A program made the translations under genes and the position numbers. Shown piece after piece: positions 50,706 through 54,717 of a stretch of DNA of 64,000 bases (positions are counted from its first letter, which is position 1; each line of letters opens with the position of its first letter). Below the pieces are notes generated by a model that had not been told where the DNA came from, did no database searches, and worked only from the letters and a program-made list of their open reading frames with translations. Origin of the DNA: Callorhinchus milii (lineage: Eukaryota); contig NW_024704778.1 of the NCBI RefSeq assembly GCF_018977255.1, positions 496,001 through 560,000 of the forward strand, written 5' to 3'.

Positions 50706-50842
50706 ATGGCTTTGCTCAGCATTCCCTTAGCTCTGCTACTGATTTCAGCCCAGCTGGGACTTTCTCTCGCTCTCCCCCTATCCGAAGGGGCTTCACCCAC
50801 TAAGATGACAATATCGTCTCCGTTGCCAGTCAACATGTCCAG
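50706..50842 (+). CDS. gsdf: GSDF-like TGF-beta ligand, exon 1 (signal peptide)
   Basis: actATGG Kozak; encodes MALLSIPLALLLISAQLGLSLA-LPLSEGASPTKMTISSPLPVNMS; ends AG|gtaaga (phase 2, matches exon 2). Confidence 0.85.
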
Positions 50843-51289
50843 GTAAGATGCAGCCTGGGGCTCTCTGCATGTCAGCAATGCCCAGGACCTTTGTATTAGA
50901 CATGGCAGCTTTCACGCCAGTCACTACACTAAAGTAACTAAATCCCGTGAAGTGCTTTGAGACATTTCAACATCACACTGTCAAACACGCGGATTAAGAA
51001 CCATAAATAACCCTTATGTTTGATATAGCGCTTTATCACGTCTTAGAGATGTCTCAAAGCATTTCACAGAATGTATTGTAAAGTGTAGTGACTGTATATT
51101 TTATGGGTGAAATGCGGTAACTTATTGCGCACAGCAGAGCCCCACAAACAGTCGCGGATTGAGTGACCAAATTTTTTTAAAAAAGGGATTATTACCCCCG
51201 GAAAAGCGGTCTAACCACTGAGCTACAGGACTCCACACAGAAAGGTTGGCTGAGCAAAGGGAAGGGGGGGGGGGTAGAGGAGTGGGGTG

Positions 51290-51452
51290 TGAGCAGATCG
51301 GAGAGGTAGAGAGGTGCCAGGGCATGAAGGGATTTGTTAGTGAGTGTGAGGAGCTTGAACTCGATGTGTTGTGTGACAGGGAGCCAGTGGAGACTGGCGA
51401 GGACTGACGGGGGGGAATGGGGGTGCGGAGTTTGCTGCGGGCGAGGACATGC
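51290..51452 (-). mobile_element. L2-clade LINE ORF2 fragment
   Basis: VLASLHWLPVTQHIEFKLLTLTNKSLHALAPLYLSDLL. Confidence 0.75.
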
Positions 51453-52591
51453 ACTACACAACTGACAAATCTTAAAAGTCACTGAACGCACATTTTCACA
51501 TCGTAATCTCTTGGATGCAAACGTGTCTGTACCTGTGGAGTTTTAGAGGAATGTGGGGAGTGCGATTCCGAGGGAACAATAGAGAGTATTCAATCAAATT
51601 TACAAGTCCATAGCGTCTCAGGACAGAGAGGACTGGCAGAGAGGTCAGTGACAAGGGTTAGAGACACAGTAAAGTTCCCTCTATACTGTGCGTCCATAAT
51701 TGGCTGCAGCGTTTTGCCTACAAAATACACAGTCACTGCACTTTACAGAATATTGTGAAGCGCTTTGAGGGGTCTCAATGACGTGATAAGGAGCTGTATC
51801 AAATGCAAGGATTATTATTAATATTATTATTTCAGCTTAGTGCTGAGATGGGGAAGGGCGGCCCACATTGTTAGAAACACAGTTAAACAGAGGTCCCGTC
51901 TGTGCTCTGTTCAGGCGGACATCAAAGATCTCCCACAGCGCTATTGGGGAAAAGAGGAAGGAGTTTTTCTCTTTTTCGCTCTCTCCCAGTCCCCCCCAGA
52001 TAAAATTGCTCGCTTGCTCGCGTGACGGCTGTTTGCTGGGATGTTGCTGTGCGCAAATTGATTGCCGTGCTTGTCCTGAAACAAAAATATTTGACAGTAA
52101 TTATCGACGAGCAGTTTTTTTTTTCCATGCGATTAAAAAGTTCCTATAAAAACGCCAGCTCTTTGGGTCCTATTTCGGTCGAAAGCAAATGTCAAGAGAT
52201 TTAATAACAAGAGGAGATACAGACTAAACACCTCTCTCCCCTCCTTTCCCCAATGCGTACCATTCTTGGCATTATTCCACAAGCTGTGATAGACTGACTG
52301 CTCAGTACTGTTCATAGATACTGATCCACACTTATACAATAATAATCCTTGCAGTTGATTCTGCGCCTTATTAAGTTGTTGAGACGTCTCAAAGTGCTTC
52401 ACAGAATAAAGTTTGCGGGACATTGCTGTGCTTAAAATTGTCTGTCAGGGTGTCTCAAAACAAAACACAGTCACTGCACTGACTGCAGAGAACTTTAACA
52501 TCCCCCTGAACAGGCACACAGATGGGAGTGAGAATGATTATGATTTATGGAAATAAACACACTTTTTAAAAAAGGTTTATTTGTGTTTCAG

Positions 52592-52743
52592 GTGTAAGGA
52601 GAGTTTGGTGCGAAGTATGAAAACGGTTCTGCTTCGGGGTTTAAACCTCGAACGCGCTCCCTCTGTAAATCCGCAACTGACACACTCACTGCGGGTCATG
52701 TGGAGAGCCAACCTCGGGCTTCTGGCAGGAGAAACTCAACCAG
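52592..52743 (+). CDS. gsdf: GSDF-like TGF-beta ligand, exon 2 (pro-domain)
   Basis: ttgtgtttcag|G TGT AAG...CCA G|gtacat; encodes (R)CKESLVRSMKTVLLRGLNLERAPSVNPQLTHSLRVMWRANLGLLAGETQP, with the LLxxLNL..P...W pro-region pattern of fish Gsdf. Confidence 0.88.
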
Positions 52744-52829
52744 GTACATTTAATAATAACAATTATAATTCTAGAGATAGAGACAGACAGACACACAGAC
52801 AGACAGACACACAGACAGACACACAGACA

Positions 52830-53068
52830 CACAACATATTAAATTTACACAGCGTTCATGTCGGGAAGACGTCCCAAGGCGCTGGACAGTCAGGGATTTG
52901 AACCCGAGCTGGGCGTTGGGCAGGGAGGGTGGGGTAGGAGGGTGACCGAAGGCGCAGTCGAGGAAGAGGATCTTGAGACAGGCCTTGAAGGAGGCAAGGA
53001 AGGGAGCGAGGGGAATGGGATTGTGGGATGGAGTTCCAAAGGGTGGGGGCAGAGAGGCTGAAGGCAGG
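52830..53068 (-). mobile_element. L2-clade LINE 3' end in gsdf-like intron 2
   Basis: AFSLSAPTLWNSIP...SFKACLK plus the same L2 tail in reverse. Confidence 0.75.
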
Positions 53069-53169
53069 GAGACAGATAGAGAGACACAGATACACAGACA
53101 CACACACACACAGACAGACACAGAGGGAGGGATGTGAGGTATGATTAAAACCAATGTGTTTGATGGCAG

Positions 53170-53268
53170 CAGAGAGCCAGAGCCTGACAGACACAGCGGC
53201 CTCAGCCGTGAGCACTCACACAGCGGGGCAGAGAGACTGCTGCCAGACTGTCTCCATCTCCCTCACAG
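53170..53268 (+). CDS. gsdf: GSDF-like TGF-beta ligand, exon 3
   Basis: tgtttgatggcag|CA GAG... (NAGNAG acceptor; alternative start 53173) ...CTC ACA G|gtaaga; encodes AESQSLTDTAASAVSTHTAGQRDCCQTVSISLT. Confidence 0.85.
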
Positions 53269-53705
53269 GTAAGAGGGTAAGATTAGCTTGCCTTAACCTG
53301 GCTTAACTTGTCACTGCCACTTAAATCAACACGGTGTCAATATCCCGGCTGCATTTATTTATGTAATTATACACGCGCCCACCTCGCCACTTCTCGTCAC
53401 TTAGCCCTTTTCCCTTCGAGTGACCAGCTATCAGGAGGTTGTATATTATTATACCCTCAAAAACAAATGTGGTCACTTAACCCACGACTGTTTGTGGGTC
53501 ACTGTTGCGCGCAATCGGTTTGCCTCGTTTTGCCCACAAAATACACACGCGGTGACTACACTTTATATATCCCGTGAAGCACTTTGAGAGATGTCGCAAA
53601 GACGTGGTAGGGCGCTGTATCAAATGCAAGGATTATTATTATTATATCTATAAAGATGATCAACGTGAGTTTAATAGCCTGTCTGCCCTTTCCCACTCCA
53701 CTCAG

Positions 53706-53836
53706 ATCTCGGCTGGGAAAACTGGATCATTCACCCAGAGGAGTTTCCCTACATCCTGTGCACCAACTGCAGAGCAGGGAGAAACTCACAGTCACCACAC
53801 TGCACCCATGACCAGCAGAGACACACAGCGCGCAAG
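53706..53836 (+). CDS. gsdf: GSDF-like TGF-beta ligand, exon 4
   Basis: cccactccactcag|AT CTC GGC TGG...CGC AAG|gtatgt; encodes DLGWENWIIHPEEFPYILCTNCRAGRNSQSPHCTHDQQRHTARK (TGF-beta DLGW.xW.I.P motif; CxxC without the usual Gly). Confidence 0.92.
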
Positions 53837-54093
53837 GTATGTCCTCCCAGCCCACTCCCCCCCCTTCTCCATCTTCAGGTTGTATGGCTTGGAAGAACCA
53901 AGCAACTTTGGACCTAAGGTTTCGGAACCTTTCCGCTGTGCCGTAGACTAATCCACGCAGAATTAATTGCTATCAGCATCTCTTCTATATTGTAGCATGT
54001 TACTGCCAGAATGGTAGAAAGCGAACTAGATGGACCTTGGACTTCTTATCCTCCATTCTTTTGCTCCTGTGAGAGCGAGCGTCAAAGGAGATA

Positions 54094-54478
54094 TGGAGGC
54101 CTGTAGCTCGGTGGTTAGAGCACTCGCCTCGCAAGCGAGACAACCCGGGTTCGATTCCCAGGCGGGCAGGGTGAAACGTTGGGCAAGTTTCGTTACTCCA
54201 CACACACACCTGGGTGTGTGGACAGTGTAGAGGGAGCAGTAAATAGGAATCCAGTTGCTAGTCGATTGGCAGATTGCTTTTCTGGGGTAATAACCTCTCA
54301 AATAATAATAATTTGGTCACTCAATCCACAACTGTTTGTGGGACACTGCTGTGCGCAATTGGCTGCCGAGTTTCGCCCACAAAATATAGTCAGTTCACTT
54401 TAGAGTATATGCTGTGAAGCGCTTTGAGACGTGTTGAAGACGTGATAAGGAGCTGTATCAATTGCAAGGATTATTATA
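54094..54478 (+). mobile_element. tRNA-derived SINE, full length, in gsdf-like intron 4
   Basis: tggaggcctgtagctcggtggttagagcactcgcctcgcaagcgag...ggttcgattccc...aaggattattataa. Confidence 0.87.
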
Positions 54479-54600
54479 AAGGTGAGAAAGTGGATGTTAC
54501 AGTGAATTCTGGGCTGTGAGGTCAATGTGAAGTGGGTTAATATAACCTGGTTTGGACACTGAGCTGAACTTAACACTCCCTGCCTTATCCCACTCTACAG

Positions 54601-54717
54601 GCTAAATGCTGCCGAAACAACAGACGGACATGGGTGTCTGTGGTTTACATAGACGCAGACGAGGGGCTGGTGACGAGTAATGTGCCCCTGACCGCAAGGT
54701 GTAGCTGTCGGGCATGA
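54601..54717 (+). CDS. gsdf: GSDF-like TGF-beta ligand, exon 5 (stop); total 211 aa
   Basis: ccactctacag|GCT AAA TGC TGC...GCA TGA; encodes AKCCRNNRRTWVSVVYIDADEGLVTSNVPLTARCSCRA* (CC...Y.D...CxC cystine-knot end). Confidence 0.92.
   Translation, partial: AKCCRNNRRTWVSVVYIDADEGLVTSNVPLTARCSCRA

What the first reader, a model, noticed from the sequence alone, without database searches (positions are those of the whole stretch)
50706..54717. Hidden, intact 5-exon GSDF-like TGF-beta gene in a probable cartilaginous fish
Five exons (137+152+99+131+117 = 636 nt) with canonical GT-AG sites and matching phases give MALLSIPLALLLISAQLGLSLALPLSEGASPTKMTISSPLPVNMSRCKESLVRSMKTVLLRGLNLERAPSVNPQLTHSLRVMWRANLGLLAGETQPAESQSLTDTAASAVSTHTAGQRDCCQTVSISLTDLGWENWIIHPEEFPYILCTNCRAGRNSQSPHCTHDQQRHTARKAKCCRNNRRTWVSVVYIDADEGLVTSNVPLTARCSCRA*. 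The signal peptide, very short pro-domain, CC...DLGWENW..P, CxxC lacking the Gly of the usual CxGxC, CC...Y.D...LT..CxC, ~211-aa length and 5-exon layout match teleost Gsdf, a gonadal and sex-differentiation factor absent from mammals. The ORF track shows only exon 2 in the right frame, so it is easily missed or left uncharacterised. I cannot tell whether this locus is already annotated.
Basis: partly seen in the sequence, partly recalled or inferred. Interest (0 to 1): 0.9.

Follow-up and report, generated by a model that had tools for sequence, protein, structure and literature searches.

The report
Annotated gsdf gene of elephant shark
The five exons are real and are spliced in RNA, but they are the already annotated and published gsdf gene (a gonad growth factor of the TGF-beta family) of the chimaera Callorhinchus milii, so the finding is correct but ordinary.

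Summary
Contigs of four public runs guessed to be RNA cross all four junctions with no mismatch.

The interpretation also holds, but the gene is not hidden. A search with the exon-4 peptide found a 100% identical database protein. Its cluster mate P0007 is RefSeq XP_007909244.1, "gonadal somatic cell derived factor [Callorhinchus milii]". A 210-aa isoform, X2, uses an acceptor 3 nt downstream.

A profile built only from 22 ray-finned-fish Gsdf proteins scores the protein at 148 bits, almost end to end. The best solved TGF-beta ligand, BMP-7, scores 53.7 bits. The knot has C-x-x-C without the glycine, the published Gsdf signature (PMC6007259). In a tree it is sister to nine elasmobranch homologues, support 99/99.

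Papers already report gsdf in C. milii (PMC6007259, 2018; PMC12989411, 2026). Gonadal function here is inferred, because the tissue of the runs is unknown. I did not search the joined model; whole-protein steps used the stored database proteins. Verdict: already known, low interest.

The parts
50220..50619 (.). Tandem repeat (VNTR; period 50 x 7.3 copies, also read as period 20 or 30) directly upstream of the start codon. Its last ~40 nt lie inside the 5' UTR.
Evidence: TRF. RNA-type contig X1 record 1 starts at 50578, inside the array.
50578..50705 (+). 5' UTR, minimum extent. The true transcription start was not determined.
   Evidence: X1 record 1 (361 nt, 0 other letters) lies on 50578-50839 and continues into exon 2 (table 8). 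Contigs cannot show a start.
50706..50842 (+). Coding exon 1 (137 nt): start codon, hydrophobic N-terminus (probable signal peptide) and the beginning of the pro-region.
   Evidence: Junction to exon 2 seen in X1 record 1 and X2 record 7. 100% identical to P0007 residues 1-45.
52592..52743 (+). Coding exon 2 (152 nt): pro-region with Cys47 and the conserved LLRGLNL...P...LR..WR helices.
   Evidence: Junctions seen in X1 record 1, X2 record 7 and X3 record 14. Helices 44-62 and 73-93 have pLDDT 88-97 in the model.
53170..53268 (+). Coding exon 3 (99 nt): linker and start of the knot domain (Cys120-Cys121). An alternative acceptor at 53173 (tandem cag|cag) gives the 210-aa isoform X2, which lacks one Ala.
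   Evidence: P0001 versus P0007 differ by that one Ala. X3 record 14 and X2 record 9 run from 53167, which fits only the 53170 acceptor.
53706..53836 (+). Coding exon 4 (131 nt): LGWENWIIHPEEF finger 1, the C-T-N-C knot motif without Gly, and Cys162.
   Evidence: Pfam TGF_beta, E 0.0023, on this exon alone. 15 of 15 weak PDB hits are TGF-beta ligands. Junctions seen in X1 record 3, X2 record 9 and X4 record 21.
54601..54717 (+). Coding exon 5 (117 nt including TGA): Cys176-Cys177, finger 2 and the terminal C-S-C.
   Evidence: Junction seen in X4 record 21. 100% identical to the P0007 C-terminus.
54872..54877 (+). AATAAA, a candidate poly(A) signal 155 nt after the stop codon. This is an inference only.
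   Evidence: Read. No contig of the four runs covers 54728-54878 (table 2), so the 3' end is not shown.

Best explanation
This is the gsdf gene (gonadal soma-derived factor, RefSeq LOC103190318) of the holocephalan Callorhinchus milii. Five coding exons are transcribed and spliced into an mRNA for a 211-aa secreted-type pre-protein.

The protein has a hydrophobic N-terminus, a short two-helix pro-region of about 95 residues, and a C-terminal TGF-beta cystine-knot domain. The knot motif is C-x-x-C instead of C-x-G-x-C. A tandem acceptor gives a minor 210-aa form.

Shown here: the exon structure, splicing in RNA-type contigs, identity with the annotated protein, family membership by profile, motif and fold, and its position next to the elasmobranch homologues.

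Inferred from work on bony fishes: it is made by gonadal somatic (Sertoli or granulosa type) cells, is secreted, and acts as an orphan TGF-beta-type ligand that favours testis differentiation and germ-cell proliferation. No R-x-x-R site lies between the signal region and the knot, so I infer that it may act without furin release of the pro-region.
For: - Structure and frames.
- All four junctions appear in contigs with 0 other letters, from runs of two studies.
- phmmer with the exon-4 peptide against 1.84 billion representatives gave 6 hits at E<=0.001. The best was P0001 at 100% identity.
- P0001 is XP_007909245.1 (isoform X2). Its cluster mate P0007 is XP_007909244.1, 'gonadal somatic cell derived factor [Callorhinchus milii]', 211 aa, identical to every exon peptide.
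- Pfam TGF_beta on P0001 scores 35.5 bits against a cut-off of 27, over residues 119-208.
- Family searches found 13 of 13 and 24 of 24 hits to be proteins of 111-326 aa. Apart from the query's own protein, they come from cartilaginous or ray-finned fishes (one has no source name), and several are named gsdf.
- A profile of 22 actinopterygian Gsdf proteins scores P0007 at 148.0 bits over profile positions 6-208 of 218. The best of 54 PDB matches is BMP-7 at 53.7 bits, mature domain only.
- BLASTP against sea bass Gsdf1 gives 92 bits, 27% identity over 205 collinear residues with 2 gapped positions, pro-region included.
- C-x-x-C is present in 32 of 32 family members.
- Tree: sister to 9 elasmobranch proteins, clade support 99/99.
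- AlphaFold model: knot fingers at pLDDT 85-97. Every Foldseek PDB match listed is a TGF-beta-family ligand or pro-ligand, led by BMP-6, activin A and BMP-2 (E about 2e-5).
- Literature passages: gsdf identified in C. milii and lack of Gly diagnostic (PMC6007259); 'bona fide gsdf' in C. milii, orphan ligand, teleost roles (PMC12989411); five exons in teleost gsdf (PMC9275722).
Against: - The tissue of the four runs is coded and unknown, so gonadal expression is not shown. The runs are only guessed to be RNA, although spliced contigs in runs of 60-217 million letters are hard to explain otherwise.
- Depth is low (2-20). No contig covers the 3' UTR.
- My tree has no Amh, Inha, Gdf15 or Lefty sequences. 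Its only outgroup is one very long branch, so the root is unresolved and the C. milii end branch is long at 1.08. Exclusion from other subfamilies therefore rests on the profile comparison and on published trees, whose figures I could not see.
- The recognisable neighbours differ from the teleost gsdf block nup54, aff1, klhl8, ptpn13, sdad1 (PMC12989411 passage). They are a biotin-carboxylase-type gene and a p24/GOLD gene.
- Identity to teleost Gsdf is only 23-36%.
- The signal peptide and the lack of cleavage are read from the sequence, not predicted by a dedicated tool or tested.
Confidence: 0.92

Rival explanations
1. The chondrichthyan gene is an ancient paralogue (for example an ohnologue) of bony-fish gsdf rather than its one-to-one orthologue. 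It would be retained in cartilaginous fishes at a different chromosomal place, possibly with a diverged role.
For: The flanking genes recognised in the window are a biotin-carboxylase-type gene on the minus strand at 16988-19407 and a p24/GOLD gene on the minus strand at 57856-61762. Neither belongs to the teleost block nup54, aff1, klhl8, ptpn13, sdad1 (PMC12989411 passage). Branches are long and identity to teleost Gsdf is low.
Against: Only one Gsdf-type gene per cartilaginous species came up, apart from a 111-aa fragment (P0003) of the Chiloscyllium protein. The tree follows the species tree: chimaera, then elasmobranchs, with rays and sharks apart. The pro-region is collinear with teleost Gsdf. 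That paper already reports synteny eroding in gar. Only ORFs of 110 aa or more in one 64-kb window were looked at, 8 of 55 by Pfam.
Confidence: 0.06
2. It is a divergent member of another TGF-beta subfamily, as older automatic names suggest ('inhibin beta C chain-like', 'uncharacterized protein LOC103190318').
For: Source names for the same protein. Homologues carry automatic names such as 'bone morphogenetic protein 4-like' and 'growth/differentiation factor 6-B-like'. As a single sequence its best PDB hits are BMP-7 and GDF-8.
Against: Those PDB hits reach only 28.6 bits and cover the knot only, against 92 bits full-length to sea bass Gsdf1 and 148 bits to the teleost Gsdf profile. There is no Gly in the knot motif. 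The pro-region has about 95 residues, whereas the pro-forms of GDF-8 and inhibin beta A matched at chain positions of about 232 and higher. There is no R-x-x-R before the knot. The current RefSeq name is gsdf.
Confidence: 0.02
3. The gene is transcribed but no longer functional: a decaying lineage-specific copy.
For: It has the longest end branch within the family tree, 1.08 against a median of 0.17. Contig depth is low.
Against: The 211-codon frame across five exons is intact, with canonical splice sites. All ten family cysteine positions are kept, including the last knot Cys that elasmobranchs lack. 23 columns are invariant across 12 sequences from cartilaginous and ray-finned fishes. Pro-region and fingers are confidently modelled.
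Confidence: 0.02

Closest known systems
RefSeq gsdf of Callorhinchus milii (XP_007909244.1 isoform X1, 211 aa, P0007; XP_007909245.1 isoform X2, 210 aa, P0001; LOC103190318)
   Same: Identical. All five exon peptides match P0007 at 100%. Isoform X2 differs only by the Ala at the exon 2/3 joint.
   Different: Nothing in the protein differs.
Elasmobranch Gsdf homologues (Scyliorhinus canicula and Mobula hypostoma named gsdf; Rhincodon, Chiloscyllium, Heptranchias, Pristis, Pristiophorus, Hemitrygon and Narcine not named gsdf: eight 'uncharacterized', one 'inhibin beta C chain-like')
   Same: They are the nearest relatives: 29-38% identity, similar length in most, a shared pro-region motif LLRALNL..IPR, C-x-x-C, and one clade at 99/99.
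   Different: 9 of 9 elasmobranch proteins lack the last knot cysteine, and 8 of 9 lack the pro-region cysteine. The chimaera protein keeps both, as bony fishes do.
Teleost Gsdf (e.g. sea bass Gsdf1 and Gsdf2, Paramormyrops, Silurus, Sardina)
   Same: Size of 182-242 aa, a collinear pro-region plus knot, a ten-cysteine pattern, C-x-x-C without Gly, and a five-exon gene (PMC9275722 passage).
   Different: Only 23-36% identity. The chimaera protein ends 2 residues after the last Cys, whereas 20 of 22 ray-finned-fish proteins carry a longer tail of about 8-16 residues. Different neighbouring genes were recognised (versus the PMC12989411 passage). Function has been tested only in teleosts.
Canonical TGF-beta ligands with solved structures (BMP-6/7, activin A, GDF-5/8/11/15, TGF-beta1)
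   Same: The cystine-knot growth-factor fold: Pfam PF00019, Foldseek E about 2e-5 with TM 0.5-0.6 on the target.
   Different: They have C-x-G-x-C with Gly. Where the pro-forms of GDF-8, inhibin beta A and TGF-beta1 were matched, the knot begins around chain position 230-280, so their pro-domains are much longer. By recall, a furin site precedes their knot. They score 20-54 bits on Gsdf profiles against 148 bits for this protein.

Membership tests
Gsdf (gonadal soma-derived factor) subfamily of TGF-beta ligands | C-terminal TGF-beta cystine-knot domain | tested here: met
   PF00019 scores 35.5 bits (cut-off 27) on P0001 residues 119-208. Exon 4 alone scores 19.1 bits. The model's fingers have pLDDT 85-97, and the Foldseek top matches are BMP-6, activin A and BMP-2.
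Gsdf (gonadal soma-derived factor) subfamily of TGF-beta ligands | Knot motif lacks the glycine of C-x-G-x-C. This is stated as diagnostic in PMC6007259 and PMC3636272 (passages read). | tested here: met
   C-T-N-C at residues 148-151. 32 of 32 aligned family members have C-x-x-C. Literature.
Gsdf (gonadal soma-derived factor) subfamily of TGF-beta ligands | Closer to bony-fish Gsdf than to any other TGF-beta subfamily (separate clade) | tested here: met
   A teleost-only profile scores P0007 at 148.0 bits end to end, against 53.7 bits for the best PDB ligand and 48 bits per domain for P0005. Caveat: no Amh or inhibin-alpha chain reached E<=0.001, I do not know whether such chains are in the PDB copy, and I had no sequences of them for the tree. 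Published trees include C. milii (PMC6007259 passage; figure not seen).
Gsdf (gonadal soma-derived factor) subfamily of TGF-beta ligands | Short precursor (about 200-240 aa) with an N-terminal signal peptide and a short pro-region collinear with known Gsdf | tested here: met
   211 aa. BLASTP to sea bass Gsdf1 covers residues 8-210 with 2 gapped positions. The profile alignment spans residues 7-210. The signal peptide itself is only read from the hydrophobic N-terminus MALLSIPLALLLISAQLGLSLA; no predictor was available.
Gsdf (gonadal soma-derived factor) subfamily of TGF-beta ligands | Five exons and four introns, as in teleost gsdf (PMC9275722 passage) | tested here: met
   Five coding exons and four GT-AG introns, all junctions seen in contigs. 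Only the count was compared.
Gsdf (gonadal soma-derived factor) subfamily of TGF-beta ligands | Conserved synteny with nup54, aff1, klhl8, ptpn13, sdad1. PMC12989411 uses this to separate 'gsdf' from 'gsdf-like'. | tested here: inconclusive
   Flanking exons recognised are Biotin_carb_N/CPSase_L_D2 (16988-19407, minus strand) and EMP24_GP25L (57856-61762, minus strand). None of the block's genes was recognised. However, only ORFs of 110 aa or more in a 64-kb window were listed, and 8 of 55 were scanned.
Gsdf (gonadal soma-derived factor) subfamily of TGF-beta ligands | Expression in gonadal somatic cells, usually testis-biased | not testable with these tools
   Spliced contigs show transcription, but the samples and tissues of runs X1-X4 are coded.
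Inhibin beta C/E-like (older automatic name of the same protein) | C-x-G-x-C knot, a long pro-domain, and an R-x-x-R cleavage site before the mature domain (features recalled, not from a call) | tested here: not met
   C-x-x-C, a pro-region of about 95 residues, and no R-x-x-R between residue 21 and Cys120. Inhibin beta A scores 38-40 bits on the Gsdf profiles.

The most novel reading that the evidence does not exclude
The chimaera protein may keep the ancestral ten-cysteine Gsdf, in which the pro-region cysteine (Cys47) is disulfide-tethered to the knot domain, perhaps to Cys162. Gsdf would then act as an uncleaved, self-tethered pro-ligand rather than as a released mature dimer. Elasmobranchs would have rewired this arrangement by losing Cys47 and the last knot cysteine together.

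The hint is co-loss. 8 of 9 elasmobranch proteins lack Cys47 and 9 of 9 lack Cys209. Sea bass Gsdf2 lacks Cys47 and Cys162 together. No conserved R-x-x-R precedes the knot in any of the 32 proteins. This was not tested structurally: residues 155-169 are modelled below pLDDT 50 and I had no model coordinates.
Probability: 0.12. Interest if true: 0.45.

Novelty: already known. Interest (0 to 1): 0.08.

Why it matters
As a discovery it matters little. The gene is in RefSeq under the name gsdf, and its existence in C. milii has been used in print since 2018 to date gsdf to the common ancestor of cartilaginous and bony fishes.

The session adds three small things:
- Independent contig support for all four splice junctions and for the 211-aa form.
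- A clean demonstration that a reader without tools can rebuild a spliced vertebrate gene correctly.
- A side observation that the chimaera keeps two cysteines that all sampled sharks and rays have lost. This may bear on how this orphan ligand folds and whether it is cleaved.

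Tried and rejected
- Exon-wise Pfam found nothing for exons 1, 2, 3 and 5. Exon 5 found nothing in the PDB sequences. Short exon peptides are too weak on their own.
- The search for homologous proteins with P0001 alone returned only itself, 1 of 373 candidates. Alignments were needed to reach relatives.
The tree used 33 of the 37 proteins held. 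I left out P0001 (isoform of P0007), P0002 (repeat protein, chance hit), P0003 (111-aa fragment) and P0037 (168 aa, no Pfam domain on record). Its single outgroup, P0005, sits on a branch of 4.2, and the root is unresolved.
- I replaced the outgroup test with a like-for-like profile comparison.
- The paper search 'gonadal somatic cell-derived factor' + 'elephant shark' gave 0 papers.
- Supplementary files were not opened. The accession tables of PMC12989411 and the Extended Data tree of preprint 10.1101/2025.03.13.642935 may show exactly which C. milii sequence those authors used; I saw only text passages.
- I considered a chance ORF chain, a processed pseudogene and a repeat artefact, and rejected them. 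The high depths inside the introns (table 2) are interspersed repeats shared with other loci, not this transcript. One 231-nt contig (X1 record 2, 51411-51640, minus strand) lies in intron 1 and is unexplained.

Full report
**Observation.** Every intron begins GT and ends AG. The mechanical ORF list shows exon 2 inside a 106-aa ORF and the other exons only as short or out-of-context pieces.

**Transcription and splicing.** No listed run is on record as RNA, but five small runs of the same coded organism are guessed to be RNA and hold 5-16% of the stretch's words. That is about what the exons make up of the 4501 bases. I laid four of them. Contigs without any differing letter cross every junction:
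- E1-E2: X1 record 1 (262 + 99 letters) and X2 record 7 (64 + 102).
- E2-E3: X3 record 14 (143 + 69).
- E3-E4: X1 record 3 (96 + 135) and X2 record 9 (99 + 107).
- E4-E5: X4 record 21 (132 + 56).

The pieces end 2-3 letters before the exon ends only because 'cag' or 'ag' stands on both sides of each joint, as I checked. The runs belong to two coded studies. X1 record 1 begins at 50578, so the 5' UTR is at least 128 nt long and reaches into the tandem repeat at 50220-50619. No contig covers 54728-54878. The 3' end and the AATAAA at 54872-54877 therefore remain an inference. The very high depths inside the introns are interspersed repeats. Contigs cannot give expression level, strand or tissue.

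**Identity.**
- Only the exon-4 peptide touched Pfam TGF_beta (E 0.0023, 19.1 bits, below the cut-off of 27). All 15 of its weak PDB matches were TGF-beta ligands. Exon 5 matched nothing.
- phmmer with the exon-4 peptide against 1.84 billion representatives returned six proteins at E<=0.001. One was a 210-aa protein at 100% identity (P0001). Three were Gsdf-type proteins (P0003, P0004, P0006). One was a repeat protein taken as chance (P0002), and one was a duplicated invertebrate-like TGF-beta protein (P0005).
- The sources name P0001 as XP_007909245.1, isoform X2, of Callorhinchus milii. Its cluster mate P0007 is XP_007909244.1, 'gonadal somatic cell derived factor [Callorhinchus milii]', 211 aa, formerly 'uncharacterized protein LOC103190318' or 'inhibin beta C chain-like'.
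- P0007 is identical to all five exon peptides.
- P0001 lacks only the Ala at the exon 2/3 joint. This is what the tandem acceptor cag|cag at 53170/53173 would give.

So the window comes from the elephant shark, a chimaera.

**Family membership.** From here on I used the stored database proteins.
- Pfam TGF_beta passes its cut-off on the whole protein (35.5 bits, residues 119-208).
- Searching with alignments brought 13 and then 24 proteins. The first set was eight further elasmobranch species, two mormyrids, the query's own protein and two proteins already held (P0004, P0003). The second was a spread of ray-finned fishes including sea bass Gsdf1 and Gsdf2. No member of another TGF-beta subfamily came up, even at E<=1. 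In one search only the 8000 candidates sharing most words were scored, and only proteins of 0.55-1.75 times the query length are seen.
- Because that left me without paralogue outgroups, I made a non-circular test. A profile of the 22 actinopterygian proteins alone (A5) scores the chimaera protein at 148.0 bits over profile positions 6-208 of 218, pro-region included. The best of 54 solved-structure matches, BMP-7, scores 53.7 bits on the knot only.
- Pairwise, P0007 aligns with sea bass Gsdf1 over 205 residues with two gapped positions (27% identity, 92 bits). Its best PDB match reaches 28.6 bits.
- The knot motif is C-T-N-C. All 32 aligned proteins have C-x-x-C. This lack of the glycine is called diagnostic of Gsdf in PMC6007259 and PMC3636272 (passages read) and is described again in PMC12989411.
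- In a maximum-likelihood tree of 33 proteins, the chimaera protein is sister to the nine elasmobranch proteins (clade 99/99; elasmobranchs 97/96). It has a long end branch of 1.08, and the root on the one distant outgroup is unresolved.
- An AlphaFold model (mean pLDDT 70.3) gives confident fingers and two confident pro-region helices. Residues 18-42, 95-117 and 155-169 are poorly modelled. All Foldseek PDB matches listed are TGF-beta-family ligands or pro-ligands (BMP-6, activin A, BMP-2 and others, E about 2e-5).
- Teleost gsdf genes are reported to have five exons and four introns (PMC9275722 passage), the same count as here.

**What is known.**
- PMC12989411 (2026; passages read) repeats this. 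It describes a tree clade of chondrichthyan, basal sarcopterygian and amphibian gsdf, calls Gsdf an orphan ligand with yeast two-hybrid hints of Amhr2 and Bmpr2, and names nup54, aff1, klhl8, ptpn13 and sdad1 as the conserved teleost neighbours.
- The preprint 10.1101/2025.03.13.642935 (passages read) says phylogeny validated cartilaginous-fish orthologues of Gsdf among other sex-determination genes.
- PMC9275722 (passages read) reports sex reversal on loss of gsdf in gibel carp, and an intracellular interaction with Ncoa5 in vitro.

I did not see figures or supplements.

**How it most likely works.**
- Shown: a spliced mRNA for a 211-aa protein with a hydrophobic N-terminus, a short helical pro-region and a cystine-knot domain of the Gsdf type.
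- Inferred from bony fishes: secretion from gonadal somatic cells and action as a TGF-beta-type ligand that promotes testis differentiation and germ-cell proliferation, with the receptor unknown.
- Inferred from the sequence: there is no R-x-x-R between residue 21 and the first knot cysteine in this protein, and none at a conserved place in the family. The pro-region may therefore not be released by furin.

**Against, and open points.** The tissue is unknown, and the runs are only guessed to be RNA. The neighbours recognised in the window are a biotin-carboxylase-type gene (pyruvate-carboxylase-like by recall) and a p24/GOLD gene (TMED10-like by recall). They are not those of the teleost block. 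This leaves a small chance of old paralogy rather than strict orthology, although only a 64-kb window and long ORFs were examined.

**Verdict.** The gene is already known and annotated, so interest is low. The one thing worth a note is the cysteine pattern. The chimaera keeps the pro-region Cys47 and the last knot Cys209, as ray-finned fishes do. By contrast, 8 of 9 and 9 of 9 elasmobranch proteins lack them, and sea bass Gsdf2 lacks Cys47 and Cys162 together.

Noticed in passing
Proteins P0004 and P0009-P0016 versus P0007 (alignment A4); in the window, Cys209 is encoded in exon 5 (54601-54717) and Cys47 in exon 2 (52592-52743): All 9 elasmobranch Gsdf homologues end in ECGW, ECGEE or ECGQE and lack the last cysteine of the knot's C-x-C. 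8 of 9 also lack the pro-region cysteine. The chimaera and 22 of 22 (last Cys) and 21 of 22 (pro-region Cys) ray-finned-fish proteins keep them. Sea bass Gsdf2 lacks Cys47 and Cys162 together. This co-loss may point to a pro-region-to-knot disulfide.
   Followed up: partly
window 50220-50619: A tandem repeat rich in GTCTGAGAC units (period 50 x 7.3 copies, 89% matches) ends 87 nt before the start codon. An RNA-type contig begins at 50578, inside the repeat, so part of it is 5' UTR. I did not test that.
   Followed up: partly
window 16988-19407, minus strand: Exons with Biotin_carb_N (72 bits) and CPSase_L_D2 (50 bits) domains. By recall this is the N-terminal part of pyruvate carboxylase, and the gene runs toward lower coordinates.
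   Followed up: partly
window 57856-61762, minus strand: Three exons with the EMP24_GP25L (p24/GOLD) domain, TMED10-like by recall, about 3 kb downstream of gsdf and convergent with it. Neither flanking gene belongs to the teleost gsdf block named in PMC12989411.
   Followed up: partly
window 41296-41832, plus strand: A 178-aa ATG ORF, basic at its C-terminus, with a weak sub-threshold match to Pfam RDD1 (23.6 bits, cut-off 27). It is possibly an exon of the gene upstream of gsdf.
   Followed up: no
window 38441-40000 and 60050-63700: Long GC-rich low-complexity repeats give spurious Gly/Cys/Val-rich or Pro/Thr-rich ORFs of up to 511 aa on both strands. Runs of N (assembly gaps or masking) lie near 40.2 kb and 62.5 kb. 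I left them alone.
   Followed up: no
window 51411-51640, minus strand (intron 1): A 231-nt contig of run X1 (record 2, depth 11.8, 0 other letters) lies inside intron 1, on the opposite orientation in the contig table. It could be unspliced RNA, an antisense transcript or DNA carry-over.
   Followed up: no
P0004 (Scyliorhinus canicula XP_038643284.1): The N-terminal ~90 residues of this RefSeq gsdf model do not align with the signal peptide and pro-region of the other 31 proteins. The teleost profile matches it only from residue 91. The first exons of that model are probably wrong.
   Followed up: no
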